Source of the DNA: Hydrolagus colliei
Lineage: Eukaryota
Assembly: GCA_035084275.1 (NCBI GenBank)
Contig: CM068771.1
Span: forward strand, 1,178,001 to 1,242,000
Length of the DNA stretch: 64,000 nt
Reading direction: 5' to 3'
Numbering within the stretch: the stretch's first letter is position 1; every line of letters begins with the position of its first letter. The notes under the pieces were generated by a model that was given only the letters and a program-made list of their open reading frames with translations, did not search any database and was not told the DNA's origin. The position numbers and the translations under genes were made by a program. Positions 4,908 to 63,569 of the stretch are shown here, piece by piece.

Positions 4908-6745
4908 ATTTTTTTACCAACATATTAAGAGTAAAAGGTTGGTCAACGATTGGGTGGGGCCAATTAGGGACCTAGGAGGAAATCTCATTGTGGAGGCAGA
5001 GGGCATGGCTGATGTACTGAATGAGTACTTCACCTCTGTCTTCACAAAAGAAAAGGATACAGCCAATGCCATGGTATTGGAGGAGAGGGTAGGAGAAATG
5101 GATAGAATAATTATAACCAGAGAGGAAGTTCTAAAAAGGTTGACGTCGCTCAAGGTGGATAAGTCACCTGGTCCGGATGGGATGCACCCTAGGTTACTAA
5201 GGGAGGCACGGGAGCAAATAGCAGGGACTCTGGCCACGATCTTCCAATCTTCCTTGGACACAGGGGTCGTGCCAGAGGACTGGAGGATAGCTAATGTTAC
5301 TCCCTTGTATACAAAGGGGCAGAAGGACAAGCCTGGTAACTACAGACCAGTCAGTCTAACGTCGGTAGTGGGCAAACTTCTAGAGTCCATAATCAGGGAC
5401 AAGGTAGATCTTCACTTAGAAAGATAGAGGCTAATAAAGGACAGTCAACATGGATTTGTTAAAGGCAAATCTTGCCTTACAAATCTGATAGAATTTTTTG
5501 ATGAGGTAACGGAATGGGTGGATAATGGTAGCGCAGTTGATGTAGTTTACATGGACTTTCAAAAGGCATTTGACAAAGTGCCACATGAGAGACTTATTAT
5601 GAAATTAAAGGCCCATGGCGTAAAAGGGACAGTGGCAGCGTGGATCCACAACTGGCTGCGAGACAGAAAGCAGAGAGTTGTAGTGAGCGGCTGTTTTTCA
5701 GACTGGAGGGAAGTGAGCAGTGGTGTGCCACAGGGATCAGTTTTGGAACCATTGCTGTTTGTAATCTACATCTATGATCTGGACTTGGGTGTACGGAGTA
5801 CAGTTTCTAAGTTTGCAGATGACACTAAGTTAGGGAGAATAGTAAATAGTGAGGAGGATAGTAGCCATCTGCAAGAGGATATAGACAAATTGGTAAAGTG
5901 GGCAGACACATGGCAGATGAAGTTTAATGCAGAGAAGTGTGAGGTGATGCATTTTGGGAGAAGAAATGAAGGGAGGCAATATAGGCTAGATAGTACAATT
6001 TTCAATGGTGTGAAGGAACAGAGAGACCTGGGGATTTGTGTTAGTGACTCGTTGAAGGTGGCAGGACAGGTAGACAAGGCTGTTAAGAAGGCATATGGGA
6101 TACTAGGCTTTATAAATAGGGGTATAGAGTACAAAAGTCAGGAAGTGCTGACTAACCTCTATAGGACTTTGGTGAGTCCTTAGCTGGAATACTGTGTTCA
6201 ATTCTGGTCACCAAACTACAGAAAGGATGTGAAGACATTGGAAATGGTACAAAGAAGATTTACTAGGATGGTGCCAGGATTGAGGGACTTCAGCTATGAG
6301 GAGAGGCTAGATAGGCTAGGGTTATTCTCTCTGGAGCAGAGAAGATTGAGGGGAGACCTAATAGAGGTTTATAAGATCATGAGGGGTTTCGACAGGGCAA
6401 ATAGAGAAAAACTATTTCCAATCGTGGGCGAATCTGTGACTCGTGGTCACAGATTTAAAATAGTTTCAAGGCGAAGTAGAGGGGAGCTGAGGAGAAATTT
6501 TTTCACTCAGCGAGTTGTTCGAATCTGGAATGCATTGCCTGAAAAGGTGGTGGAGGCTGATTCGATAACAACTTTTAAAAGCGAATTAGATCTTTATTTA
6601 GGGAGAACAGGTCTATTAGGCTATGGGGAGCGGGCAGGGCAGTGGGATTGAATCACTGTTTTCAAAGAGCCGGCACAGACTAGATGGGCCGAATGGCCTC
6701 CTTTTGTGCTGTAAAATTCTATGAATCTATGAATCTGTGAATCTA
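4908..6745 (+). mobile_element. 5'-truncated CR1-clade LINE (RT domain, C-terminus and 3' UTR)
   Basis: ORFs at 4801/5518/6229 share one frame, broken by TAGs at 5425 and 6181; motifs KSPGPDGMHPR, NYRPVSLTS, DFQKAFDKVPH, GVPQGSVL, KFADDTKL; ends in a (GAATCTAT)n tail. Confidence 0.93.
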
Positions 6746-7769: not shown

Positions 7770-7859
7770 GACCATGTGGCCTAATGGATAAGGCGTCTGA
7801 CTTTGGACAACTTGTCTAAAGCCATCAGAACATTGCAGGTTCGAGGCCTGCCATGATCT
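7770..7859 (+). pseudogene. Intron-containing tRNA-Arg-body gene with anticodon changed to TTG; probable pseudogene
   Basis: Paralog of 18871-18959; anticodon TTG at 7803-7805, 17-nt intron 7807-7823, B-box GGTTCGAGGCC, acceptor-stem mismatch. Confidence 0.8.
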
Positions 7860-8843
7860 CGGAGATATATTTATTGTGAAGTTTGTATATTGTAAATCGG
7901 TAATTTGTGTTTTGTCTGACATACGTGTTGCTGTGCAAACAATTAACTAGATGGTGGTGCTGATCACACCACTGTTGCTGTTTTCTCCGGCTAATAATGC
8001 CATTGTCATTGCATATTAATAGCATCCTGTCAATGACCCAACTGAAATCCTCTTGACCAGTTTCTTCCTTCACCAAATGATATTCTCTCATTGATTATTC
8101 CAAGTCTTTACTCACCAGCAGTGGCTTACTGATGATCGGCTGCTTCTTAGATACAAAAACAACAAATGGGGAAGTCCCGAAAATAGGCAACAAGAACAAC
8201 ACTTTTGCATTAATATAGCTCCTCCCTTTCTAACAACCTCAACTGCGCCTGTCCCTTGCATATCGCTCTGGAAAATACCCTGCAACAAAACACAGCCTTT
8301 GATGCGCTCTGAGACGCCGTCCAGCATGGAGGGCGCTATATAATTTGAAGTGACAAAAAAAGCCTCACCCTCATCATGGTGAGTTGACCACACTCCACTG
8401 CTTCTCTGATCATACCCCACCCTGGCCCCCAGCCCCACCCAACCCACCCACAACCCACCCCACCCACGCCCCCCAGCACCACAGCCCCACCCCATCCCTG
8501 CCCTCCCATCCCCCAGGGACCTTTCCATTTTCCATCATGCAATGGGTTAATCAAATACTTTATTTGGCTGTCAGGAAAGAGACAAACAGTTAATGGCAGG
8601 TTCTGTGTTCCTAAGGGATGAGACTGGAAGCACCAAATAATCCTCATCCAATCCAATTTTGTAATTTTGGTCATCCCGAGGACCCTCAGTGGATTAAAAT
8701 TCCACTGAAAATCCTACATTCGCTGCAGTCGATTTGAGCTGCCGAACATCTGTGATGAATCCCTGTAAGGCATCCTCCTAACAAGCAACAATGACAACAA
8801 AATTACAATGACGACAAAATTACACTCCACAAAATTATTTTGT

Positions 8844-9190
8844 GGAGCTCCTGTGGCTCAGTGGTTAGAGCACTTGTCTTGCAAGCTGGGGAGACCAAGC
8901 TGGGGAGACCTGTGTTCGAATCCAGGCAGGTCAGGGCGAAACCTTGGGCAAGTTTCCTTACCCCACATGCCTAATAATAATCCCTCCAAAAAAATCACAA
9001 TAATAAAATTGGTCATTTCAATCCACAATTGTGTGTGGGACACTGCTGTGCGCAATTGGCTGCCACGATTCACCCATAAAATATATACAGTCAATTCACT
9101 TTACAGTATATTCTGTGAAGCGCTTTGGGACGTTGATAAAATGTGTAAAGCGCTATATCAAATACAAGGATTATTATTATTATTATTATT
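8844..9190 (+). mobile_element. Full-length tRNA-derived SINE (young subfamily)
   Basis: A box TGGCTCAGTGG, B box GTTCGAATCC, core, (TTA)n tail; highly similar to 31069-31418. Confidence 0.9.
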
Positions 9191-9392
9191 ACTTATAGAG
9201 CGCCTTTCACATCGAGAGGACGTCCCAAGGTGCTAAACATAAAGGACAATATACAAATCTAAACTGTTGTCAGCATAGAGTTGGTATAAAATTGCCAATA
9301 GTAGCGATTGCATGCTGAAAAGGGTTTAATTTAGAAATTAACTGTTGGTAGTTTTTTCTTTAATACAAGAGGAAACACTGAACTATACAAGA

Positions 9393-9465
9393 ACTGAAAT
9401 AGCTCAGTTGGGAGAGCGTTAGACTGAAGATCTAAAGGTCCCTGGTTCAATCCTGGGTTTTGGCA
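9393..9465 (+). tRNA. tRNA-Phe-GAA: tRNA-Phe(GAA), degenerate copy (possible pseudogene)
   Basis: Matches vertebrate Phe-GAA but has G1>A and several CpG>TpG changes in the acceptor and T stems; followed by TTTTT. Confidence 0.75.
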
Positions 9466-9710
9466 TTTTTGTTCAGTTTGACTGTAACTCACAGCCTCGA
9501 TATTCCCCAAATCTGTCCTGTATGAGCAGCCATGATCGTTTGGAATGAGCAACATCTGTATTTATTTGTTCTAAATTTTGTTTAATTTGGTTAACTACTG
9601 TAGAGTTTTTGGATGGTGCAACCATAGGTAAAATATTACAGAGGCAATGGATAAATCAAAGGGTTGATTTATTAATCATAGGATGGTTATTGAATAGTTG
9701 CAACTATACA

Positions 9711-10120
9711 TCATAGAATCATAGAATGTTACAGCACAGAAGGAGGCCATTCGGCCCATCGAGTCTGTGCCTGCTCTTTGACTGAGCAAGTCACTTTCAT
9801 TAACCCCAATCACCAGCTTTCTCCCCGTAACCCTGCAAACCCATCTTCCCCGGATACCTATCTAGTTCTATCTTAAAAGCTGCTATCGAATCGGACCTCA
9901 CTACCCTTTCAGGCAGATCATTCCAAATTTGAACAACTTGCTGAGTAAAAAAAAATATTCTAACCTCCCCTCTGCTTCTTTTGGTAGATATCTTAAGATG
10001 GTGACTATGGGTCACAGACACACTTACCAGAGGAAACAATTTTCCTTATCTAGCCTGTCGAAACCGTTCATGATCTTGAAGACTTCTATCAGATACCCGC
10101 GTAACCTTCTCTGCTCTACA
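9711..10120 (-). mobile_element. CR1 LINE 3' end
   Basis: Minus ORF 'RGEVRIFFFTQQVVQIWNDLPE' resembles the C-terminus of the 4908-6745 element; (TTCTATGA)n tail. Confidence 0.85.
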
Positions 10121-11102
10121 AAACTGCACTGTATCTTACAACTGCAGAACCTAATTCAGGGCTCCAATAATCCTAAATAAACCAATAATCCTTTGGCTAA
10201 TTATTTAACCATGAACCCACATGGATATGGGATACAGTATCTCACGGATACTGTTTGAACAGTGTCACAGTGGTATCCCAATGGTGTCCAAATTCTTAAC
10301 ATTTGTTTTGATCTCTTATACTCCAAAGTTTGGACATATGTTGATGAAATATGGTGTAGCCAGAGGCCATTCTACCCAATCAAAGTTCACACTTTGATTG
10401 TTCATTCACATTCCTGAACTGATCCGTCCAATCATCTTTCCACAAATGGGAGGCCGCAGGGTTTATCAGGGTTTTAATCTCAGGAAGTTGGAGTTTTTCT
10501 GTTTCCATAGGTGAAGAGATCGATTCGACAGTTAATTGTTATTTTTTGATCTTCACATCATAAAATTAAGTTAACTTGAAGCTACATATTTCTGTTTTTG
10601 TGAATGTTGACATTTAGGTCTTCTTCGTTGATCATAGCATCTCTTACATCAACACAATGTCCATTTGATTGACTTGAAAAAGATTGTTAGCCACCATCCT
10701 TCCAAATAAGGAAAGAAATAACACCCGTCCATCATGTCCTCATAAACACAAGCACAAAACTCACAAACACAGACCTCACTTCATTTGGTCCAAACGCTCT
10801 GTCTCACATTTCTTAAGATCACTCAAGATTGTCCCAGTTCTTACATACACTTTGGGCTATCAAATAATAATTTGAATAAAGATTTTAAAGCTCTTTGTAC
10901 AGTCCCTTCAAGCTCTTCTTACATGACAAACTGGGTGCTCCTGACATGCTGTCAGTAATTCAAGAGAACTGTTAGATTATTTGCCTGGCAATTGGATTTC
11001 AAGATCATGATCAACTCTAATAAATGTGTTGTAAATGAACGAAGATCCCTTCAGTTTGTATTGCCAAATCACTTGTTGAAATTTCAGGTATTTGATGTAT
11101 GT

Positions 11103-11192
11103 GGCTCGTTGGTCTAGGGGTATGATTCTCGCTTTGGGGTTGCAACTAAATAAACATGCGAGAGGTCCCGGGTTCAAATCCCGGATGAGCCC
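11103..11192 (+). tRNA. tRNA-Pro-TGG: tRNA-Pro(TGG) with 18-nt intron (11139-11156)
   Basis: 72-nt vertebrate Pro body GGCTCGTTGGTCTAGGGGTATGATTCTCGCTTTGGG|TGCGAGAGGTCCCGGGTTCAAATCCCGGATGAGCCC split after G37. Confidence 0.9.
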
Positions 11193-13298
11193 AAAATGTA
11201 GACAAATGTTGCCTATGTATCTCGCTTGATTGTGTTTTGAAAAAGTAAACTTTTGTTGTGAGTCAACATAGTAACTAACAAATTCAAATGGGGTAATAGG
11301 CATCTGGTACAGCATCAGTGGTAGAGAGGTAGCATGCAAGATTACTATTGTTTTGAGCTAGGTTTGGATTTGGGCGATTGCTCAATATAGTGGAGTTCCT
11401 GTAGCTCAATGGTTAGAGCAGTTGCCTTAAAAGCGTGAGACCTGTGTTTGAATCAGGCAGCTCTTGGGCAAATTTCCTTATTCCACATGCCTAATAATAA
11501 TCCATCAGAGAGTTGTTGAGATTCAGGGTATACGGACTTAAACCTCAGTCTGCAATGTTATGCTGGATGAGATGAGGACTACCAGCAGATGAGGTGAAGC
11601 TGAGTGACATCTTGGAGTACGGTCAGAGCAACTCACCATGGTAGGGAGATACCGGGGCATGGCGAAGTTTGAACGTAAGTGTATGAACCTTGAAATTGAT
11701 CCCTTATACAACAGGTAGTGAATGGAGCCTTGCCTCCGACTCCGACTTCTTCAAGGATCAACTGAAGATCTTTGACTCTTTGAACGTGTCTTTGGCCATC
11801 TTCCTACTCAACCCTCACCTAGTCCACCATCCTCAATCATTCCCCAATCCCCGACCCACGATCAGGTCAAAATCCCTTACATTCCAACATCTTAGGATGA
11901 CCCTGACATAAAAGTAGCTGTACAAATATGGTGTTGTGTTTTCTCCATGAAACAATCGATCATAAGAAGAGGTGCTGTACAGTGTACGTTGATGATTTTC
12001 TTTTTCATCAGAACACCCATCATCTCCTTGTTTTCTCCAGGTTGCTTATGATAGTGGACCATTCCATCTTCCTTGATCTCTTTACTTTCCTCTGTGGCAC
12101 ATAACCTTATTGGAGTCATGTAGCTCGATGGCTAGAGCACTCGCCTCACGGGCAAGAGATCTGGGTTTGATTCCTGGTAGGGCAAAACGTTTGGAAAGCT
12201 TCATTATTCAACAAGCCTGACAATCATCAAAATGGCCTGCAAAGATGTGCTAAAACCAACAACAAACAGTAGCAGTAAAATGACATTATAAATTGGCTTT
12301 CACGTCTGTGGGATGTCCTGGGTGAAAGGAAGACTTTGAGAGAATTTGGTTGAAAGATACAAGGAGTATTAGTCACTAATCTTGGGTTCATGGATGACAA
12401 AAACTTCAGCCTGGACACTGCAATGAGAAGGGATTCAGGAGACACTGATGATACCCATCCCTCATTAAGGGCAGCCAGGTCTCAATGCAGGTAGTGATGG
12501 TCAACTAGTGGCCCTATCTGGACAAGCAGTGGGAAAGTTTGCTGGACAGAAAACTATGCGGTTTTAGATGGTAAGTGTGCAGCAGTTACTCCAACACATG
12601 ACAGGTTCCCCAAGCCTTAACTCTTGCCAAACTGTGCTGAATACTTCCGAAAGTGGGTAAGCAGAATGCATCCCCACAGGGAGCGAGTATGCATTCCTAT
12701 GTATGTAGCGCAGGCTCTTGATGCATTGAGGCACCAACGGGTACAGCAAAGGAATTTCCTCTGACCTATTTGTAAATTTCAGCATCAAGCCATCAGGTGA
12801 ATTTGCAGCATAAATGGGAAGTGACTGCACAGAAGAGTAAGGTGCAGGTTGAACAGAACCAAGACATGGGGCTCTTGAGTGTGCATTGGCATAACTGTTG
12901 TACTTTACCAGCTTCAACTGCAGAGCTAGTCATTGAATATAATGCTGCACAATTTCATTTCGATAAGTCGATGTGTTATAGCTTTGTTGTGCTTGAGAGA
13001 ATCCAAGTGGGAATAAGCGCTGATGCCATTGACTGGACCAATTGGCCATTTCCTGCCGTTGAGCCATTCTGGCAGGTCTGTCAATCACTGGGTCCTGGGG
13101 TCTGTCTCAGGAGGAAAACAAGCAAGTTAGTCACAGAGTCACAGTTTGATTCTCTGGTTTCATTGCTAAGCAACAACCGTGAAACCAGCTCAGCTCCCAG
13201 AAGATTGTGTTACCCCAGGAGAGTAGTGCTTAGTTTACTAGAAACAATATCTGCGCAGTTCTGGTTGATTAGACTGTTGGGATTTCTCTCTTTTAGTG

Positions 13299-14620: not shown

Positions 14621-15831
14621 TCATGGTTCACGCACGAAACATACAGGCAACCTAATTTACTGTATATTATGTGAAGGGTTTGAGATATCTCAAGGTTGTG
14701 ATAAAAAGCTACAGAAAATGCTATGATTATTAAATGCTTTCCAGTGTCCCCTCTGTATTAGTGGAAAACCACTCGTGATTAAATGATTAAATGAGAAGTA
14801 AAATGAAGACTTTAACGTATAATATAAACTTTTTTTTAAAAAAATCGATGTCACTTTATTATTTGTGACCACTTAATAGAGAGTATGTAAAACTGTAATT
14901 ATCTGACATATGTTCAAGGATAACTCGATATACTATGGTTCCTCAGCATTTGTCTAGTTATCTGAACCATCAATTTCACCAGTGATTCTCAATAATATTG
15001 TATTAATGAATGCATTTGATGCAGCGACTTTCACCACATGAGGAATACTGTAAGTGCATCAGTGGTTAATTGAAAATTGTAGTGATTGTGTATCTTGAAG
15101 GGGACAGGAACAGCCAAGTAGCACAAATTGCCATGAAGTGAGTAATCAATTTTGTTCCTGGCCAAGATACCGGGAGAAACTCCCTATTATTTCACAATAA
15201 TATTGTGGGATTCTTAAACATTCACCTGAACATGCAGACGATTTCTCAAGTTAACCTCTCATCTAAAAAATGGAACTTTCGAACATACAATAAACACTCC
15301 CTCATCAAAAAACTGCAATGCAAACCCAGAGCATGGATTCAAATGGTAATACACTGCAAGAAATCTGAAATAAATACAGGAGCCGATCAGCAAAGTCAGG
15401 TAGCATCTATGGAGAGAGTAAAGTGACTTAACTTTTCTGGCTGATGAATATTCAAAGCTGGATTGCGTTTTAAATTAAGCTGACCACAAATACAATGCCT
15501 TTATTTAATCATATAATATTTGATCTGAAGCATAACAATGGGGATTTTATTCCCAGGTGAGAGATATGAGATTGATAATATTTAACACCAATATTTGTAT
15601 TCCTCCATGAAAAGCAATACACAAATGTAATTTTGTTGTTGGTCTAAACAGTATTGTATATCTGAAGCGATGCAGGATCCAGGTGCATCTAAAAAGACCA
15701 GTTTATCTCCGAATTTATGCTAGTGGGATGATTTCACAAAACATTTACCTATTCTGCCTGATGATATATTTGTGTAAATCGCATGCTTTTGGAGAGAATT
15801 GAACAGCAATTGACCTTTATCTTTCTTATAG

Positions 15832-16733
15832 TCAACCTGGTTGCGATTGTGATCCTATCCCGGGGAAAGTGTGGTCTCTCCAGATGCATCACTTGTTACC
15901 TGGTGTCCATGTCATCAGCCGATCTATTGGTTATCATCAGCGACGTGATACTGACTCGACTGAATTATCTTTATTTTCCAATTTGCTTCCTGGACCTGAC
16001 TCCTATGTGTTCGTTTGGAACCTGCCTGCTGTGTGCAGCCACTGACTGCTCTGTGTGGCTCACAGTGAGCTTCACCCTTGATCGCTTCATTGCCATTTGC
16101 TGTCCGAGGCTGAAACTGAAATATTGCACAGAGAGAAGCGCGGCTGTGGTGATAGGCACAGTTTGCGCTCTGAGCTGTTTCAGGAACATTCCCTGGTATT
16201 TTATTTATCAGCCTTGGTATACCATTGATAATTTGCCGTGGTTTTGCAAGACTAAAGAAAGCTATTATGGTTCCCGGGCCTGGGAAATCTACTCCTGGTC
16301 TTATACCATACTAACCCCTTGCGCTTCCTTTGTTCTGATTTTGCTGCTGAACACACTGACCATCAGACACATATTAGCGGCAAACAGCGTCCGGAGGAAT
16401 CTTCTTGGCAACAGCAGCACTGGCAATGCTAACGACACAGAGATGGTCAACAGGAAAAAATCCATTGTAATTCTCTTCGCTATATCTGGGAGTTTTATAC
16501 TTTTATGGATGACATACGTTATATATTACTTATATAGACAAATTGCTGAGTATTTTTCTTACTCGGGCTACAATGATCCCGTCTATGTTCTGTATGAATG
16601 TGGATGGATGTTGCAGCTTCTCAGTAGCTGTACTAACACGTGTATTTATGCTGTTACCCAGGCTAAATTCAGAGACGAATTGAAAAAAGCAGCTAAATAT
16701 CCATTAAAATTCATACGTAAAGTGGCTCAATAG
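15832..16733 (+). CDS. GPR139-like GPCR g2, coding exon 2 (spliced protein 334 aa)
   Basis: Acceptor ctttcttatag|TC AAC is in frame with exon 1; DCSVWLT..TLDRFIAICCP, FILLWMT, SSCTNTCIY. Confidence 0.92.
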
Positions 16734-18870: not shown

Positions 18871-18959
18871 GACCATGTGGCCTAATGGATAAGGCGTCTG
18901 ACTTCGGTAAAACATGTAAAGCCATCAGAAGATTGCAGGTTCGAGTCCTGCCATGGTCT
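18871..18959 (+). tRNA. tRNA-Arg-TCG: tRNA-Arg(TCG) with 16-nt intron (18908-18923)
   Basis: Perfect acceptor stem GACCATG/CATGGTC, A box TGGCCTAATGG, anticodon TCG 18904-18906, B box GGTTCGAGTCC, T5 terminator near 18971. Confidence 0.9.
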
Positions 18960-21462: not shown

Positions 21463-22553
21463 TTACGTAGTACTAAGGATTACGTGTAGTAATCGATGGT
21501 GTCTCTGGAGATGCCCTGGCTGCGTGAAACTCCTTCCACATTCACCACAAGTATAAGGTTTCTCCCCTGTGTGTGATCGATGATGTCTCTGCAGGTCCCC
21601 TTTACTTCTGAAACTCTTTCCACATTGAGCACATGCATACGGTTTTTCTCCCGTGTGTGATCGGTAATGTCTTGGGAGGCTTCCTGAATGTCTGAATGTC
21701 TTTCCACATTCGGTACATTTATACGGTCTCTCTCCTGCGTGTGATCGTTGGTGTGTCTTGAGGATCCATAAACGTGTGAAACTCTTGCCACATTCAGCAC
21801 ATTTATGCCGTCTCTCTCCTGTGTGTGATCGATGGTGTTTCCTCAGGTCCCCTGACTGTATAAAACTCTTTCCACATTCAGCACAATGATATGGTCTCTC
21901 ACCTGTGTGTAACCTCCGGTGTCTCTGAAGGTCACTTGATGTTGCAAAGCTCTTTTCACATTCAGCACATGTATGTGATTTCTCTCCCGTGTGTAATCGA
22001 TGGTGTCTCTTGAGGTAATCTGATGCAGCAAAACTCTTTCCACATTCGGCACATTTATATGGTCTTTCTCCTGTATGTAATCGTTTGTGTATCTGGAACA
22101 TTCCTGAATGTGTGTATCCTTTTCCACAATCAACACATCGATACGGTCGCTCTGCTGTGTGTGATTGCTGATGTTTCTGGAGATGCCCTGATTGAGAAAA
22201 ACTCCTCCCACATTCTGCACATTTATATGGTCTCTCTCCTGTGTGTATTCGCTGGTGCCTTTGGAGAAACTTTAAATGTTTGAATCTCTTTCCACATTGG
22301 GCACATTCATATGGTCTCTCTCCTGAGATCGATCGCTGGCGACTCTGCAGAGATGTTGTTTGCGTAAATCTCTTTTCCACAACAGATCCATGACACTTTA
22401 TCTGCTGAGAAGAATCATTTCCCTTAGCAGCAGATTGTGTTGCTGATGTGTTTCGATGAAGATTGGGATACCTTCTGCTGTGCTTCTGATGGATCGAGGC
22501 ATGAGTAAATACAACATTACAATGAGGGCGAGGGTGAGAAATAGAATCATCCA
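21463..22553 (-). CDS. Terminal exon of PRDM9-like (PR/SET-less) C2H2 zinc-finger gene; 10 C2H2 fingers
   Basis: Acceptor tttcttttctccccaaag|TG (phase 1); degenerate finger HPRPHCNVVFTHASIHQKH, spacer, then 10 CxxC-x12-H fingers with TGE(R/K)P-type linkers. Confidence 0.9.
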
Positions 22554-23559
22554 CTTTGGGGAGAAAAGAAAGATCCGTGTCAACAACATGAGTTTTCTGT
22601 AGGAAATATATTTACACCAATTTTGAATTAATCCTTACATTTTTACAGCACTTGATCAAGTTAAGCATTTCATAGGCTTTACAATCAACAACAACTTGCA
22701 TTTATATACACCCCATAGACAGGTAGCTGCACAGAGCGCTTGTCATTGATGGAGCATCAGGCCTAACTGACAGGAGGTGACCCATGGCTCAGTTGACAAG
22801 GAAGATCTTCAGGCACAATCCGAAGATGGGGAAGGAGGGGACAAAACAGAGAGATTGGGCTGAGAGTGATATGGCTGAAAGCCTAGCCACCAATGGTGGA
22901 ACAGAGTGGACTAGGGACAAAGCAGGCGAAGGAGTGTAGAGATCGACTGGCCAGGACACTGTGAGAAACTCTTATTTTAATGCTGGGGATGTGCTTCATT
23001 GCCGAAGTTGCTATCCTTCAGATGAAATTTTAAACAGGCCTATTCAAGTGGACATTAAAGATCCCACAACACAATTCCAAAATAAAAGAGGGTTTTTCTC
23101 TTATCAAAATAGTTTCCTGGTTCATAATATAGAATCACAGAATTATACAGCACAGATAAGGCCAATCAGCCTATCAGCCAGTGGCAGCTTTGCAAAGAGC
23201 GATCTAAAATAATCGTGCTCTTCCCCTCTCTAACCATATCTTGCAAATTTGTAGTCTTCAAATATCTAACCACTTGTTATCTTGAACTTTGGCACCAAAT
23301 CTGATTCCACCACCATTTCAAGGAGTGAATTCCAGTTGTGAACAATTCGAATACTCCAAATAAAACTGGCCAATTCCTTCATGAGTGGAACATTGCTATG
23401 TGGAAATTGGCAGCGGCCATCACTGCACTTCACAATAACTCTGCAGTTTGTATGGATGACGTGATAAGCTGGTATATACAATTTCAAATGTCGTAGGATC
23501 TTTCACATTATCTGAAGAAGCACGGAGGGGCTTTAGCTTAAAGGCTAGAGGCGTGGACT

Positions 23560-31789: not shown

Positions 31790-33195
31790 ACACTTACATA
31801 GTTTCTCACACACAGGGACAGACAGGCACACACTCTCACACAGTAACCTGAGACACACCCAAATACATACATTCTCACACAGTCGTTGAGATACACAGAC
31901 ACTCACTAACACAGTCACTGAGACAGACAAGCACACACTCTCTCAGTCACTGAGACACACACACACACACAGACACTGAGTCACATACACACATTCTTAC
32001 AGTCACTGAGACACACGCAGTTAGAGACACACACATACACACACTCGTTCACTGAGATACACACATACACACACTCTCAGTCACTGAGACACACATACAC
32101 ACTCTGTCACTGACACACACACACACACTCAGTCACTGACANNNNNNNNNNNNNNNNNNNNNNNNNNNNNNNNNNNNNNNNNNNNNNNNNNNNNNNNNNN
32201 NNNNNNNNNNNNNNNNNNNNNNNNNNNNNNNNNNNNNNNNNNNNNNNNNNNNNNNNNNNNNNNNNNNNNNNNNNNNNNNNNNNNNNNNNNNNNNNNNNNN
32301 NNNNNNNNNNNNNNNNNNNNNNNNNNNNNNNNNNNNNNNNNNNNNNNNNNNNNNNNNNNNNNNNNNNNNNNNNNNNNCACACACACACTCTGTCACTGAC
32401 ACACACACACTCTCAGTCACTGACACACACACACACACTCAGTCACTGACACACACACACACACTCAGTCACTGACACACACACACACACACACACTGTC
32501 ACTGACACACACACACTCTCAGTCACTGACACACACACACACACACACTCTCAGTCACTGACACACACACACACTCTGTCACTGACACACACACACTCTC
32601 AGTCACTGACACACACACACACTCTGTCACTGACACACACACACTCTCAGTCACTGACACACACACACACACACACTCAGTCACTGACACACACACACAC
32701 ACACACTCAGTCACTGACACACACACACACACACACTCAGTCACTGACACACACACACTCTGTCACTGACACACACACACTCTCAGTCACTGACACACAC
32801 ACACACTCTGTCACTGACACACACACACACTCAGTCACTGACACACACACACACTCAGTCACTGACACACACACACTCTCAGTCACTGACACACACACAC
32901 TCTCAGTCACTGACACACACACACACTCAGTCACTGACACACACACACACTCAGTCACTGACACACACACACACTCAGTCACTGACACACACACACACAC
33001 ACACTCTGTCACTGACACACACACACTCTGTCACTGACACACACACACACTCAGTCACTGACACACACACACACACACTCTCACTGAGATCCACAAACAC
33101 AGTCTCACAGTCACCGAGACACAAAACCACAGACAGACACATACACTCTCACAGCCACACCGCACTCACTCACAGATACTCTCTCTCTCTCTCTC
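31790..33195. repeat. Compound satellite [TCAGTCACTGA(CA)n] with degenerate flanks; contains an assembly gap
   Basis: Dozens of CAGTCACTGA/CTGTCACTGA cores separated by variable CA runs. Confidence 0.95.
32142..32377. other. Assembly gap (N run)
   Basis: Run of n. Confidence 1.
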
Positions 33196-33201
33196 ACTGA
33201 C

Positions 33202-33740: not shown

Positions 33741-34058
33741 TCATAATAATAATAATCCTTGCATTTGATATAGCGCCTTTCACATCTTCTAAACGTCTCA
33801 AAGCGCTTCACAGAATATACTGCAGAGAGAATTGACTGTATATCTGTGGGGGAAACGCGGCAGCCATTTGTGCACAGCAGCGTCTCACAAACAGTCGTGG
33901 ATTGAAATGACCAATTTATTATTATGTATTTCTTTGGAGGGATTATTATTATTATTATAGGCGTGTGGAGTAAGAACATTGGCCCGGACCTGCCTGGATT
34001 CGAAAACAGGTCTCACACTTGTAAGGCGAGTGCTCTAACCACTGAGCTACAGGACTCC
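33741..34058 (-). mobile_element. Full-length tRNA-derived SINE
   Basis: Reverse-complement head GGAGTCCTGTAGCTCAGTGGTTAGAGC...GTTTTCGAATCC, core and (TTA)n tail. Confidence 0.88.
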
Positions 34059-34533: not shown

Positions 34534-34599
34534 GACCATGTGGCCTAATGGTTAAGGTGACTGACTTCCGAGAACTTGTTGACGCCATCAGAAGATTGC
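34534..34599 (+). pseudogene. 3'-truncated intron-containing tRNA-Arg pseudogene
   Basis: GACCATGTGGCCTAATGG...CTTCCG[intron ending GCC]ATCAGAAGATTGC, then cut by an L2 fragment; upstream flank homologous to the 18871 copy. Confidence 0.8.
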
Positions 34600-35061
34600 T
34601 ACTGTGACCAAAGGCGCGGTCGAAGAGAAAGGTCTTCAGCTGTGATCTGAAACTGGGAAAAGAGGGGGCGAGCTGAAGGGAGTGACAAAGGGACTTCTAG
34701 AGCCTTGGGGCATAGTGGCTGAAGGCATGGCCCCCGAGGGTGGAGTGGAGAATTTAGGGGACATGGAGGAGGTCAGACCCGGTGGAGCGAATCCAGCGGG
34801 TGCTGGTTTTGGGGAGAGGGGAGATCAGAGAGGTAGGAGGGTGCAAAGGAGTGGAGGGACTTGAAAACAAGGGTGAGGATCTTGAAGTCGATAAATCTTG
34901 ACTGTTGAGTGACTCGGGATGATCTCTTCAAGTGAAAAGACGCTATTCATATGTAATTTTGTTGTAGTTGTTGTCCTTGTATTCAAAAGGTAATCAAAGA
35001 ATCAAAGAAAATGTTGGGAGTTTTTTTTTGAAAATCAGAGGAAACGCCCAATTATACAAAA

Positions 35062-35134
35062 GCCGAAATAGCTCAGTTGGGAGAGCGTTAGACTGAAGAT
35101 CTAAAGGTCCCTGGTTCAATCCCGGGTTTCGGCA
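35062..35134 (+). tRNA. tRNA-Phe-GAA: tRNA-Phe(GAA), intact
   Basis: GCCGAAATAGCTCAGTTGGGAGAGCGTTAGACTGAAGATCTAAAGGTCCCTGGTTCAATCCCGGGTTTCGGCA; full cloverleaf. Confidence 0.97.
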
Positions 35135-35395
35135 TTCTTGTTAAGTTTGACTGTAACTCACAGCCTTGATATTTCCCAAGTCTGTCCTGTCATGAGCAGC
35201 TCTGAGATTTTATGTCCTTACGTTATCTATGGACTGTACTATCTAACAAATTGAGTCAGCGATTGATGAGCACTGTTCATTTTGGCAGAAAATGATCATG
35301 ATAAACTTTGGTAAATGTGAATGAAATCAACAAAGATTGATTCAGTTTTGTATTGCCAAGTTCATTTGTTGAAATTTCAGCTTTTTAATGAGTGT

Positions 35396-35487
35396 GGCTC
35401 GTTGGTCTAGGGGTATGATTCTCGCTTAGGGCGTTAGCAACTGAAGGAACATGCGAGAGGTCCCGGGTTCAAATCCCGGATGAGCCC
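35396..35487 (+). tRNA. tRNA-Pro-AGG: tRNA-Pro(AGG) with 20-nt intron (35432-35451)
   Basis: Same 72-nt Pro body as 11103, anticodon AGG 35428-35430, split after G37; TTTT at 35491. Confidence 0.9.
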
Positions 35488-35950
35488 AACTTTTGGCAAA
35501 TGTTCTATATTTCTCATTCAAACTGTATTTGTAAGCAAATAAACTATATGGGTGAGATTACCCAAGTGCTGCAATGATGTACTCCAAGATTCCTATTATT
35601 GTGAGCCAAGTTTGTTGGAGCAATTTGTCAATTGCTTCAATATTTCTCTGCCACTGTCCCGTCTCTCAGTTGGTAGTTATTCCTATGATATCTGAAGAAG
35701 GATAATATTGTGATGAGCACCCATCATGGATACTCAAAAAGAATTTAATACTGACCAAACTTAATGATTTATTCGGAATGCAACAGGAAGTGTAGTGCAT
35801 TTCAATGTCCAGAAAGGGTTTGCAAAATGTACATAGGAGAAGTTGCTGACCATGTGGAATCATAGCAGAGGAAACAGACAAATTAAATACTCTATAAAAA
35901 GAAAATTTAAGAAGTTGTGTATAAAAAACAAGAATAACAACTTGTATTTA

Positions 35951-39367: not shown

Positions 39368-40272
39368 CTAAACATGGAAAGGAGAGTGGGCCAGTAAGCG
39401 AGTGATGGGGTAAATGAAGATGGATTTCAGGCTCTGCCTGAATTGGGTCTGGGTCACACCATAGATGACGGTGTTGGAGCAGGAGCTGAGAAACTGCAGC
39501 ATGTAACCCACATGCTCAGCGATGGTGAAAGGGCTGCTGTAGTCAGACTGCATGAGTTTGGCCTTTGTCATCAGCGCACACATGTAGGTGACCAAGTAGG
39601 TCAACCACAGTAACACGAAGGTCCCCGAGATGGTAAAGAGCAAGATTAGAGATTTCTGCCGACTCTCCATCTCCTCGTCCTTCAACGTCACTGATCCCCG
39701 CAGACGCTGGCGCACAGCGCTGGCCATTAGAACATGCCTGATGGTCAGAGAGTTGAAGAGGAGAATGACGATGAAGGGAAGCATTGGATTTACAATCATA
39801 TGAATCAAGTAAAATGACCTCCCGCCAATCGTATTATAAGAGCTGGGCTTGATGCTGCAGAACCAGGGCTGCCCATTGATCACCATCAGCGGTTGGTACA
39901 TAAAATACATGGGGATATTTATTGCGCTTAAAAATGCACAGATTGTCCAGATCACCAGGCCCGCTGTCCTCTCGGTGCAGTATTTGGGTTTGAGCTTTGG
40001 GCAGCAGATGGCAATGAAGCGGTCGAAGGTGAACGCCATGGTCAGCCAGACAGAAGTATCAATTACGAAGAAGCGCAGTACAATGTGTACTCGGCACACG
40101 GGGGTCTGGAACAAAACAAAGTGCGGCAGGTGGAGCTGAAATGTCTTCCTCAGGATCACACCAATGAATATGACCAGCAGATCAGCAACAGCCATTGCGA
40201 CCAGGTAGCGGGTGACACATTTGGAGAGTCCACACTTTCCCTGGGCCAGGACCACAATGGTCACCGCGATCG
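39368..40272 (-). CDS. GPR139-like GPCR g3, coding exon 2 (spliced 321 aa)
   Basis: Acceptor tttcctgcag|CG ATC GCG; 905-nt open exon with DRF-IAICCP and SSCSNTVIY. Confidence 0.92.
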
Positions 40273-42208: not shown

Positions 42209-42607
42209 NNNNNNNNNNNNNNNNNNNNNNNNNNNNNNNNNNNNNNNNNNNNNNNNNNNNNNNNNNNNNNNNNNNNNNNNNNNNNNNNNNNNNNNNNNNN
42301 NNNNNNNNNNNNNNNNNNNNNNNNNNNNNNNNNNNNNNNNNNNNNNNNNNNNNNNNNNNNNNNNNNNNNNNNNNNNNNNNNNNNNNNNNNNNNNNNNNNN
42401 NNNNNNNNNNNNNNNNNNNNNNNNNNNNNNNNNNNNNNNNNNNNNNNNNNNNNNNNNNNNNNNNNNNNNNNNNNNNNNNNNNNNNNNNNNNNNNNNNNNN
42501 NNNNNNNNNNNNNNNNNNNNNNNNNNNNNNNNNNNNNNNNNNNNNNNNNNNNNNNNNNNNNNNNNNNNNNNNNNNNNNNNNNNNNNNNNNNNNNNNNNNN
42601 NNNNNNN
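42209..42607. other. Assembly gap (N run)
   Basis: Run of n inside the g3 intron. Confidence 1.
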
Positions 42608-46670: not shown

Positions 46671-47575
46671 CTACACATGGTTATGTAAGTGGCTCAGTAA
46701 ACAAGTGATGGGGTAAATGAAGATGGATTTCAGGCGCTGCCTGAATTGGGTCTGGGTCACACCATAGATGACGGTGTTGGAGCAGGAGCTGAGGAACTGT
46801 AGCATGTAACCCACATGCTCAGCGATGGTGAAAGGGCTGCTGTAGTCAGACTGTAGGAGTTTGGCCTCTGTCATCAGCGCACACATGAAGGTGACCAAGT
46901 AGGTCAACCACAGCAACACAAAGGTCCCCGAGATGGTAAAGAGCAAGATTAGAGATTTCTGCCGACTCTCCATCTCCTTGTCCTTCAACGTCACTGATCC
47001 CCGCAGACGCTGGCGCACAGCGCTGGCCACTAGAACCTGCCTGATGGTCAGAGAGTTGAAGAGGAGAATGACGATGAAAGGAAGCATTGGATTTACAATC
47101 ATATGAATCAAGTAAAATGACCTCCCGCCAATCGTATTATAAGAGCTGGGCTTGATGCTGCAGAACCAGGGCTGCCCATTGATCACCATCAGCGGTTGGT
47201 AGATAAAATACATTGGGATATTTTGTGCACTTAAAAATGCACAGATTGTCCAGATCACCAGGCCCGCTGTCCTCTCGGTGCAGTATTTGGGTTTGAGCTT
47301 TGGGCAGCAGATGGCAATGAAGCGGTCAAAGGTGAAGGCCATGGTCAGCCAGACAGAAGTATCAAGGACGAAGAAGCGCAGCATAAGGTGCACACGGCAC
47401 ACGGGGGTCTGGAACAAAACAAAGTACGGCAGGTGGAGCTGAAATGTCTTCCTCAGGATCACACCAATGAATATGACCAGCAGATCAGCAACAGCCATAG
47501 CGACCAGGTAGCGGTTGACGCATTTGGAGAGTCCACACTTTCCCTGGGCCAGGACCAAAATGGTCACCGCGATCG
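46671..47575 (-). CDS. GPR139-like GPCR g4, coding exon 2 (spliced 322 aa)
   Basis: Acceptor tttcatgcag|CG; 905-nt open exon, close paralog of g3. Confidence 0.92.
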
Positions 47576-58163: not shown

Positions 58164-59068
58164 CTAAACGTGGTTATGTGAGTGGCCCAACAAGCGAGTG
58201 ATGGGGTAAATGAAGATAGATTTCAGACGTTGCCTGAACTGGGTTTGGGTCACACCATAGATGATGGTGTTGGTGCAGGAGCTGAGGGACTGCAGCATGT
58301 AACCCACCTCCTCAGCGATGGTGAAAGGGCTGCTGTAGTTGGACTGTGTGACCTGCTCATCTGTCACCATAGCGTACAGGTAGATCAACATATAGGTGAG
58401 CCACAGCAACACGAATGTCCCCGAGATGGTAAAAAGCAAGATTATGGATTTCCGCCGACTCTCCATTTCCTCATCGCTCCCCTTCGCAGTCCCCCTTAGA
58501 CGCTGCCGCACCCTGCTGGACACGAGCACTTGCCTAATTGTCAGAGAGTTGAAGAGGAGGATAAGGATGAAGGGAAGCAGTGGATTTACAGTCAGGTCTA
58601 GAAAGGCAAAGACATTCCATCCAAGAGCAGTATAACATTTGGGCTTCGTCATGCAGAACCAGGGCTGCAAATTGATCATCATCTTCGGTTCATACATAAA
58701 GTAGATGGGGATGTTCTCCAAGCATAAAAATGCACAGATTGTCCAGATCACCAGGCCCGCTGTCCTCTCGGTGCAGTATTTGGGTTTGAGCTTTGGGCAG
58801 CAGATGGCAATGAAGCGGTCGAAGGTGAAGGCCATGGTCAGCCAGACAGAGATATCAAGGACGATGCATCGCATCATGATGTGCATGCGGCACACGGGGG
58901 TCTGGAACAAGGGCAAATGCGGCAGGTGGAGCAGAAATATCTTCCTCAGGATCACAGCAATGAATATGACCAGCAGATCAGCAACAGCCATAGCGACCAG
59001 GTAGCGGTTGACACATTTGGAGAGTCCGCAGATTCCCTGGGCCAGGACCACAATGGTCACCACGATCG
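58164..59068 (-). CDS. GPR139-like GPCR g7, coding exon 2 (spliced 322 aa)
   Basis: Acceptor tttcatgcag|CG ATC GTG; 905-nt open exon with family motifs. Confidence 0.92.
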
Positions 59069-62664: not shown

Positions 62665-63569
62665 TCAAATATTATGATGTGAATGGCGCAGAAAGTGATT
62701 GATGGGATAAGTAAAGACGGATTTCAGGCGCTGTCTGAATTGGGTCTGGGTCACTCCATAGATGAAGGTATTGGTGCAGGAGCTGAGGGACTCCAGCATG
62801 AAACCCACCTCCTCAGCTATGGTGAAAGGGCTGCTGTAGTCAGACTGAAGTAGCTTTGCCGCGGTCATCATCGCATACATGTAGGTGACGATAAAAGTCA
62901 TCCATAGCAACACAAAGCTGCTCGAAATAGTAAAGAGCAGGATTATAGATTTCTGCCGACTCTCCATCTCCTCGTCCCTCCGCTTTGCAGCCCCCCTTAG
63001 ACGCTGCCTCACCCTGCTGGCCACCAACACCTGTCTGATGGTCAGAGAGTTGAAGAGGACAATGAGGATGAAGGGAATCAGTGGATTCACAATCATGTCA
63101 GTAAAGGCAAAGACTCTCCAGCCAAGAGCAGTATAACAGCTGGGCTTGACAGTGCAGAACCAGGGCTGTCCATTGATTATCATCCTCATTTGGAATGCAA
63201 AACAGAGGGGGATGTTCTCCAAGCATAAAAATACACAGATTGTCCAGATCACCAGGCTCGCTGTCCTCTCAGTGCAGTATTTGGGTTTGAGCTTTGGGCA
63301 GCAGATGGCAATGAAGCGGTCGAAGGTGAAGGCCATGGTCAGCCAGACAGAGGTTTCAAGTACGATTGAGCGCAGCATAAGGTGTACTCGGCAAACGGGT
63401 GTACGGAACAAGGGCAAGTTTGGCAGGTGGAGCAGAAATGTCTTCCTCAGGATCACAGCAATGAATATGACCAGCAAATCAGCAACAGCCATTGCGACCA
63501 GGTAGCGGGTGACACATTTGGAGAGTCCACACATTCCCTGGGCCAGGAACACAATGGTCACCGCGATCG
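62665..63569 (-). CDS. GPR139-like GPCR g8, coding exon 2; exon 1 lies beyond the window
   Basis: Acceptor ttttctgcag|CG ATC GCG; 905-nt open exon. Confidence 0.9.

What the first reader, a model, noticed from the sequence alone, without database searches (positions are those of the whole stretch)
11103..11192. Intron-containing tRNA-Pro genes with a valid splicing signature
Seen: 18-nt (TGG copy) and 20-nt (AGG copy, 35396-35487) inserts exactly after G37. The introns have diverged while the exons are identical outside the anticodon, and both introns end in ...AACA. Known: TSEN substrates pair pyrimidine 32 with the third-from-last intron base; here that is U32:A in both copies. Vertebrate tRNA introns are typically confined to Tyr-GTA, Ile-TAT, Leu-CAA and Arg-TCT. 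Inference: lineage-specific intron gain (or retention) in functional Pro tRNAs.
Basis: partly seen in the sequence, partly recalled or inferred. Interest (0 to 1): 0.8.

Follow-up and report, generated by a model that had tools for sequence, protein, structure and literature searches.

The report
Intron-bearing proline tRNA genes
Two proline tRNA genes in this chimaera-like fish genome each carry a short intron just after the anticodon, and their coding parts have stayed unchanged while everything around them drifted, so they probably still work, although their splicing could not be checked here.

Summary
Pro-TGG (11103-11192) and Pro-AGG (35396-35487) carry 18- and 20-nt inserts between positions 37 and 38.

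- **One ancestor.** The two genes share about 100 nt of 5' flank and related inserts.
- **Selection on the exons.** Exons match at 71 of 72 positions, differing only at nucleotide 34. The 5' flank matches at 80 of 100 and the insert at 13 of 18 plus 2 indel columns. That pattern points to purifying selection on both copies.
- **Splicing signature is weaker than claimed.** The U32:A(-3) pair is present in both. The helix in that register is 4 bp in the TGG copy and only 2 bp in the AGG copy. Shuffled inserts do as well in 9.5% and 41% of trials.
- **Wider context.** Arg-TCG in the same cluster also carries an insert, in 3 of 3 copies. An Arg-Phe-Pro unit occurs twice.

A census of this genome or of other vertebrates was not possible with these tools. 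Nine paper searches found no report of such genes. Earlier notes of this scan hold no such finding on other DNA.

Verdict: probably working intron-bearing tRNA genes, a new member of a known kind, of moderate interest.

The parts
11003..11102 (+). 5' flank of Pro-TGG, shared with the Pro-AGG copy (35294-35395)
   Evidence: Self-BLAST 11003-11210 against 35294-35504, 85% over 213 nt. 80 of 100 aligned bases are identical.
11103..11138 (+). Pro-TGG 5' exon (positions 1-37)
   Evidence: ARAGORN, reading, alignment. It differs from the AGG copy only at nucleotide 34.
11139..11156 (+). Pro-TGG intron, 18 nt, between positions 37 and 38
   Evidence: The helix in the anticodon-intron register is U32:A(-3), U33:A(-4), U34:A(-5), G35.U(-6). 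There is no run of four T inside.
11157..11192 (+). Pro-TGG 3' exon (positions 38-73, with U67 and discriminator C)
   Evidence: 36 of 36 identical to the AGG copy.
11235..11238 (+). First TTTT run downstream of Pro-TGG, 43 nt after the gene; candidate Pol III terminator
   Evidence: Read directly.
35396..35431 (+). Pro-AGG 5' exon
   Evidence: ARAGORN, Rfam tRNA 44.5 bits, reading.
35432..35451 (+). Pro-AGG intron, 20 nt, homologous to the Pro-TGG intron
   Evidence: In the canonical register only U32:A(-3) and U33:A(-4) pair.
35452..35487 (+). Pro-AGG 3' exon
35491..35494 (+). TTTT run starting 4 nt after Pro-AGG; candidate Pol III terminator
   Evidence: Read directly.
18871..18959 (+). Intact Arg-TCG gene of the same cluster, with a 16-nt intron at 18908-18923
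   Evidence: Rfam tRNA 62.7 bits, reading. C32:G(-3), U33:A, U34:A.
7770..7859 (+). Decayed Arg copy: anticodon now TTG, one acceptor mismatch, altered T loop; 17-nt insert at 7807-7823
34535..34599 (+). Third Arg copy, also with an insert; its 3' part is replaced by an inserted repeat
35062..35134 (+). Intact intronless Phe-GAA, 262 nt upstream of Pro-AGG
   Evidence: Rfam tRNA 69.8 bits, ARAGORN.
9393..9465 (+). Decayed Phe-GAA copy upstream of Pro-TGG, with 4 differences in 73 nt from the intact copy; three of them hit acceptor-stem pairs and one a T-stem pair

Best explanation
These are two selectively maintained nuclear tRNA-Pro genes, the UGG and AGG isoacceptors, of a holocephalan-like genome. 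Each carries a short protein-spliced intron at the canonical 37/38 position.

The intron was already in their common ancestor gene. That gene sat in an Arg-TCG(intron)-Phe-GAA-Pro(intron) cluster unit that later duplicated. One copy then changed nucleotide 34 (T/A), which carried the intron into a second isoacceptor.

Inferred mechanism:
1. Pol III transcribes each gene from its internal A and B boxes and stops at the downstream T run.
2. The tRNA splicing endonuclease measures the splice sites from the mature body.
3. It uses the U32:A(-3) pair with the 3-nt bulge (C, A, U38) for the 3' cut.
4. The RtcB-type ligase joins the exons to give a normal 72-nt tRNA-Pro with G6.U67.

Shown here: the anatomy, the shared ancestry of the inserts, and the constraint on the exons. 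Inferred: transcription, cleavage and ligation.
For: - **Position.** The insert lies exactly between positions 37 and 38 in both genes.
- **Shared ancestry.** The inserts and about 100 nt of 5' flank are related.
- **Constraint.** Exons match at 71 of 72, the 5' flank at 80 of 100, the insert at 13 of 18 plus 2 indel columns and the 3' flank at 19 of 29. Fisher's test of exons against flanks gives p = 8e-6. The chance of at most 1 difference in 72 at the flank rate is 2e-6.
- **Dead copies do decay here.** Phe-psi shows 4 differences in 73. Arg-psi has lost its anticodon and one acceptor pair.
- **Not gene conversion.** A conversion tract covering both exons would also have homogenised the intron between them, and the intron differs.
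- **Intact body and signals.** The cloverleaf is complete, T runs follow both genes and none lies inside them.
[quoted passage not shown] The TGG copy has the same 4-bp stem length as in that structure.
- **Parallel case in the cluster.** An intact Arg-TCG gene also has a 37/38 insert with C32:G(-3).
Against: - No RNA evidence.
- The AGG copy has only 2 bp in the canonical register, and 41% of shuffled inserts do as well.
- The computed minimum-energy fold of both anticodon arms pairs the anticodon with the middle of the insert. That leaves 7-8 unpaired bases before the 3' splice site instead of a 3-nt bulge.
- The TGG copy's first T run is 43 nt downstream, and its unit neighbours (Arg, Phe) are dead.
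- Measured against those dead neighbours (4 differences in 73) rather than the flanks, exon identity is less striking. A Poisson mean of about 4 gives P(at most 1) of about 0.09, which is my own arithmetic.
- It is unknown whether intronless Pro genes elsewhere supply the cell.
Confidence: 0.6

Rival explanations
1. They are dead or dying gene copies. An insertion in the anticodon loop of an ancestral cluster gene inactivated it, the copies are not spliced into usable tRNA, and the exons look intact only because decay has been slow or patchy.
For: - The cluster is full of decayed tRNA copies: Arg-psi at 7770, the Arg remnant at 34535, Phe-psi at 9393, and SINE-like tRNA heads at 12114 and 33985.
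- The splicing signature is not statistically distinctive.
- The AGG copy has a 2-bp A-I helix only.
- There is no expression evidence.
Against: Exons match at 71 of 72 while the flanks match at 80 of 100 and the insert at 13 of 18. The single difference is at nucleotide 34 and gives another standard Pro anticodon. Both copies keep all stem pairs. Known dead copies in the same units have lost pairs.
Confidence: 0.22
2. They are transcribed and conserved for a role other than decoding. Possibilities are a source of stable intron circles or tRNA halves, Pol III-bound chromatin boundary elements in the receptor-gene cluster, or stage-specific (oocyte-type) cluster genes whose splicing is regulated.
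For: - The genes lie among five rhodopsin-family receptor ORFs and a zinc-finger gene.
- tRNA introns give circular RNAs in animals (PMC4536317, search listing and abstract only).
- tRNA genes act as transcription barriers in yeast (PMC10275265 section 11 passage).
Against: Boundary or promoter function would constrain the A and B boxes, not all 72 exon positions. The intron is the least conserved part of the gene, which argues against selection for an intron-derived RNA.
Confidence: 0.1
3. Assembly or repeat artefact: a tRNA-derived SINE head or a mis-assembled junction that imitates an intron.
For: Earlier notes of this scan describe tRNA-derived SINEs as very common in this genome. Two SINE-like tRNA heads lie in the window.
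Against: There are two separate loci with different inserts of related sequence. Homology runs upstream of the gene and stops about 20 nt after it, the opposite of a SINE body and tail. No N run is nearby; the N runs are at 32142-32377 and 42209-42607.
Confidence: 0.03

Closest known systems
Human and mouse intron-bearing tRNA families (Tyr-GUA, Ile-UAU, Arg-UCU, Leu-CAA)
   Same: - The intron lies between positions 37 and 38.
- It is short: 16-20 nt here, and my recollection is that human introns are of similar length.
- The pyrimidine-32 to intron(-3) purine pair precedes a 3-nt bulge.
- Intron sequences vary among family members while the exons are fixed (PMC10275265 section 11 passages; PMC10539383 passages).
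   Different: - The isoacceptors differ: Pro-UGG and Pro-AGG, with Arg-UCG beside them.
- The Pro-AGG copy has only a 2-bp A-I stem in register, against 4 bp in the human Arg structure.
- Splicing is unproven.
Budding-yeast tRNA-Pro(UGG) gene family (10 intron-bearing genes)
   Same: The same isoacceptor carries a canonical-position intron (PMC4090602, passage in the section 'Direct examination of intron requirement').
   Different: It is a fungus, with cytoplasmic splicing and a different ligase pathway (PMC4090602 and PMC11408192 passages). No sequence comparison was made here, so shared ancestry of the introns is untested.
Intron spread by anticodon switching in yeasts (Lachancea thermotolerans Leu-CAG from Leu-UAG)
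   Same: A change at nucleotide 34 in an intron-bearing gene creates an intron-bearing gene for another isodecoder without a new intron gain (PMC4090602, section on recent gain). Here the TGG and AGG copies share one ancestral intron. Isoacceptor shifts at the first anticodon base, including Pro, are documented in eukaryotes (PMC3923123 passages).
   Different: The direction of the change (T to A or A to T) is unknown here. No outgroup was available.

Membership tests
Eukaryotic canonical tRNA intron (TSEN substrate) | [quoted passage not shown] | tested here: met
   Both Pro genes and Arg-TCG. Definition from PMC10275265 section 11.
Eukaryotic canonical tRNA intron (TSEN substrate) | Anticodon-intron base pair: C32 or U32 with the antepenultimate A or G of the intron, followed by a 3-nt bulge holding the 3' splice site | tested here: met
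   U32:A(-3) in both Pro genes and C32:G(-3) in Arg-TCG. It is weak evidence alone, because a purine at -3 is common by chance.
Eukaryotic canonical tRNA intron (TSEN substrate) | A-I stem of several pairs between anticodon-loop bases 33-35/36 and the intron (bulge-helix-loop) | tested here: inconclusive
   Pro-TGG has 4 bp, matched by 1890 of 20000 shuffles. Pro-AGG has 2 bp, matched by 8273 of 20000. Arg-TCG has 3 bp, matched by 936 of 20000. The minimum-energy folds of both Pro arms use another register.
Eukaryotic canonical tRNA intron (TSEN substrate) | Intact mature domain (cloverleaf) for ruler-type recognition | tested here: met
   All stems are paired apart from U13/U22 in the D stem, by reading. 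Rfam tRNA 44.5 bits for the AGG copy with the intron skipped. The unconstrained fold of the whole precursor does not give the cloverleaf, which is common for single tRNA sequences.
Eukaryotic canonical tRNA intron (TSEN substrate) | Intron is removed: a spliced mature tRNA exists | not testable with these tools
No run on record as RNA holds the stretch.
Functional Pol III tRNA gene | Internal A and B boxes, a downstream T run of at least 4, and no such run inside the gene | tested here: met
   By reading: the B-box-like T arm and the D-arm box are present. TTTT lies at 11235-11238 and 35491-35494, and no TTTT lies inside either gene. The box consensus is recalled, not from a call.
Functional Pol III tRNA gene | Purifying selection on the mature sequence | tested here: met
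   Exons 71 of 72 against flanks 99 of 129; Fisher p = 8e-6.
tRNA-derived SINE | tRNA-like head followed by a shared body and tail; homology extends 3' of the head, not 5' | tested here: not met
   Homology between the copies covers about 100 nt upstream and ends about 20 nt downstream.

The most novel reading that the evidence does not exclude
A cartilaginous-fish lineage has widened the vertebrate set of intron-bearing tRNA families. Working Pro-UGG, Pro-AGG and Arg-UCG genes all carry 37/38 introns that arose, or were kept, in one ancestral Arg-Phe-Pro cluster unit. The introns then spread by duplication and an anticodon switch. That would be a datable, natural case of how a vertebrate tRNA gene acquires and tolerates an intron. 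The weakly paired AGG copy would show how little intron structure the vertebrate endonuclease needs.
Probability: 0.4. Interest if true: 0.55.

Novelty: new member of a known kind. Interest (0 to 1): 0.42.

Why it matters
Reviews list four intron-bearing tRNA families in human and mouse, and three as conserved across animals (PMC10275265 passages; bioRxiv 10.1101/2025.06.17.660180 abstract and introduction). How a eukaryotic tRNA gene gains an intron is still an open question; the review read here gives only yeast examples (PMC4090602 passages).

If these Pro and Arg-UCG genes are spliced, they give vertebrate examples with paralogues of different ages. Those paralogues would allow a test of which intron features the endonuclease really needs. 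They would also allow a test of whether m1G37 or the A34-to-I34 change of tRNA-Pro depends on the intron.

The matter is modest in scope. The intron type and position are ordinary, and public tRNA catalogues, which I could not consult, may already list these genes without comment.

Tried and rejected
- **Reads.** The look-up of sequencing runs listed 12 runs, none on record as RNA.
- **Rfam.** The gathering scan found 7 tRNA matches but not the TGG copy.
- **ARAGORN names.** 'ggg' for copy 1 and '???' for Arg are rejected as intron-placement quirks, because they do not fit the 5-bp anticodon stems read.
- **Whole-precursor folds.** Unconstrained folds gave no cloverleaf for either Pro gene, so they were not used. 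Anticodon-arm folds with the stem fixed were used instead.
- **Promoter and terminator scan.** The scan on the 3' flank uses bacterial consensus patterns and found nothing, so it is irrelevant to Pol III.
- **Common origin of the Pro and Arg introns.** Considered from the letters seen. Only a 5-base word is shared, so I dropped the idea.
- **Papers.** Nine searches and passages of nine papers turned up no mention of intron-bearing Pro or Arg-UCG genes in any vertebrate. This covers only the held library. GtRNAdb and the supplements of genome papers were not available and may list them.
- **Scoring the spliced tRNA.** Not done, because joining the exons is barred.

Full report
**What is there**

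ARAGORN finds five tRNA genes in the window, among them tRNA-Pro at 11103-11192 and 35396-35487. Reading the sequence against the 5-bp anticodon stem places an 18-nt insert at 11139-11156 and a 20-nt insert at 35432-35451. Both lie between G37 and U38 (coordinates computed). The anticodons are TGG and AGG.

The rest of each gene is a complete cloverleaf. By reading, the acceptor stem has 7 of 7 pairs with G6.U67, the D stem 3 of 4, and the anticodon and T stems 5 of 5 each, with discriminator C. TTTT runs lie 43 nt (11235-11238) and 4 nt (35491-35494) downstream. Neither gene contains TTTT.

Rfam's tRNA model scores the AGG copy at 44.5 bits with the insert skipped. It does not list the TGG copy at gathering threshold. 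ARAGORN's 'ggg' for the first copy is an intron-placement quirk.

**The two genes are old paralogues with one ancestral intron**

Self-BLAST pairs 11003-11210 with 35294-35504 at 85% over 213 nt and finds no third copy in the window. In the MAFFT alignment the inserts align along their length. Counts on that alignment:

| Part | Identical |
|---|---|
| 5' flank | 80 of 100 |
| 5' exon | 35 of 36 (only nucleotide 34 differs) |
| Insert | 13 of 18, plus 2 indel columns |
| 3' exon | 36 of 36 |
| First 30 nt of 3' flank | 19 of 29 |

- Exons against flanks give Fisher p = 8e-6.
- At the 5'-flank rate, the chance of at most one difference in 72 positions is 2e-6.
- Homology runs upstream and ends about 20 nt after the gene, so these are not SINE heads.
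- A gene-conversion tract long enough to cover both exons would have erased the differences in the intron between them. Purifying selection on both copies is therefore the simplest reading.
- A Jukes-Cantor distance of about 0.23 for the flank is my own arithmetic from 20% difference. It implies a long time since duplication. I have no measured neutral rate for this lineage.

**Internal controls**

The window holds a cluster in which a unit Arg-Phe-Pro occurs twice on the + strand, at 7770/9393/11103 and at 34535/35062/35396. A solo Arg-TCG gene lies at 18871.

Dead copies in this cluster do decay:
- Phe at 9393 differs from the intact Phe at 35062 at 4 of 73 positions. Three of these hit acceptor-stem pairs and one a T-stem pair.
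- Arg at 7770 has anticodon TTG, an acceptor mismatch and a changed T loop.
- Arg at 34535 is cut off after the anticodon arm by an inserted repeat.

Measured against these dead neighbours rather than the flanks, the Pro exon identity is less extreme. A Poisson mean of about 4 gives P(at most 1) of about 0.09 by my arithmetic. That comparison is conservative, because the dead copies were presumably alive for part of the time.

**A second intron-bearing family beside it**

All 3 of 3 Arg copies carry a related insert at 37/38. The intact one (18871-18959, Rfam 62.7 bits) has a 16-nt insert at 18908-18923 with C32:G(-3), U33:A and U34:A. Of the four intact tRNA genes in the window, three carry introns: Pro-TGG, Pro-AGG and Arg-TCG. 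Phe-GAA does not. None of the three belongs to the human set.

**How good is the 'splicing signature'?**

Reviews define the eukaryotic substrate this way:
- the intron lies at 37/38;
- a pair forms between C32 or U32 and the antepenultimate A or G of the intron;
- that pair is extended by pairs with N33-N35;
- cleavage sites lie in a bulge and a loop (PMC10275265, section 11 passages).

In the human TSEN-pre-tRNA-Arg structure the stem starts at C32:G and has 4 bp, with three bases flipped out. [quoted passage not shown]

| Gene | Helix in canonical register | Shuffled inserts doing as well (of 20000) |
|---|---|---|
| Pro-TGG | 4 bp: U32:A, U33:A, U34:A, G35.U, then bulge C-A-U38 | 1890 |
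| Pro-AGG | 2 bp: U32:A, U33:A | 8273 |
| Arg-TCG | 3 bp | 936 |

With the anticodon stem fixed, the minimum-energy fold of both Pro arms pairs positions 32-35/36 with the middle of the insert. That leaves 7-8 unpaired bases before the 3' site.

The signature is therefore compatible with splicing but does not prove it. The shared AACA ending is inheritance, not independent support. The weight of the case for function rests on exon constraint.

**Mechanism proposed (inferred)**

1. Pol III transcribes from the internal boxes to the T run.
2. The ends are processed.
3. TSEN positions the splice sites by measuring from the mature body, and uses the U32:A(-3) pair and the 3-nt bulge.
4. The RtcB-type ligase joins the exons.

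One change at nucleotide 34 after duplication carried the intron into a second isoacceptor. This was described for yeast Leu genes (PMC4090602, section on recent gain). First-base isoacceptor shifts, including Pro, are documented in eukaryotes (PMC3923123, passages).

**What could not be done**

- No listed run is on record as RNA.
Precursor against spliced product, and the U67 marker, stay unchecked.
I did not score a joined, spliced sequence.
- No tool here holds vertebrate genomes or GtRNAdb. Neither the genome-wide share of intron-bearing Pro genes nor their distribution among vertebrates could be established.
- 'Lineage-specific gain or retention' is therefore open.

**Organism and setting**

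Earlier follow-up notes of this scan call the genome chimaera-like. I did not test that.

Around the tRNA cluster lie these features:
- five single-exon rhodopsin-family receptor ORFs: 15783-16733 on the + strand, and 39368-40264, 46671-47567, 58164-59063 and 62665-63561 on the - strand;
- a C2H2 zinc-finger array at 21463-22554 on the - strand;
- a reverse-transcriptase fragment at 5518-6183.

**Literature**

Nine full-text searches gave no report of intron-bearing Pro or Arg-UCG genes in a vertebrate. What the papers do say:
- Human and mouse families with introns are Tyr-GUA, Ile-UAU, Arg-UCU and Leu-CAA (PMC10275265 passages).
- Budding yeast has 10 intron-bearing Pro-UGG genes, and intron spectra in eukaryotes vary sporadically between related species (PMC4090602 passages).

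Supplements and GtRNAdb were not seen and may already list these genes.

**Verdict**

These are probably working intron-bearing tRNA-Pro genes (0.6). The intron predates their duplication, and they sit in a cluster that also holds intron-bearing Arg-UCG. This is a new member of a known kind and of moderate interest. Splicing and lineage distribution remain to be shown.

Noticed in passing
window 18871-18959; also 7770-7859 and 34535-34599: Arg-TCG genes with a 16-17-nt insert at 37/38. One copy is intact and two are decayed, and all three inserts are related. In the decayed copy at 7770 the mutated anticodon pairs with the insert in a 10-bp helix.
   Followed up: partly
window 7770-11192 and 34535-35487: A unit Arg-Phe-Pro occurs twice in the same order and strand. 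Spacing is 1.6-1.7 kb in the first unit and 0.3-0.5 kb in the second, so the first unit has been stretched by insertions.
   Followed up: partly
window 12114-12185 (+) and 33985-34056 (-): Two low-scoring tRNA-like matches (32.8 and 37 bits) with broken stems. The DNA beside or overlapping them (11388-11501 against 34062-33951) is related at 84%. They look like tRNA-derived SINE heads.
   Followed up: no
window 15783-16733 (+); 39368-40264, 46671-47567, 58164-59063, 62665-63561 (-): Five intact single-exon ORFs of about 300 aa matching Pfam 7tm_1 (E 2e-19 to 6e-24). Four of them lie in a repeated block of 82-90% identity. A tRNA cluster beside receptor and zinc-finger genes recalls, from memory, the layout of the human extended MHC region.
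   Followed up: partly
window 21463-22554 (-): An ORF with a C2H2 zinc-finger array that matches Pfam zf-C2H2 in nine stretches.
   Followed up: no
window 32378-33200, next to the N run 32142-32377: A tandem array with many overlapping self-matches at 83-88% identity, abutting an assembly gap or masked stretch.
   Followed up: no
window 5518-6183 (+): An ORF fragment matching reverse transcriptase (RVT_1, E 2e-23). It is retroelement debris upstream of the first tRNA unit.
   Followed up: no
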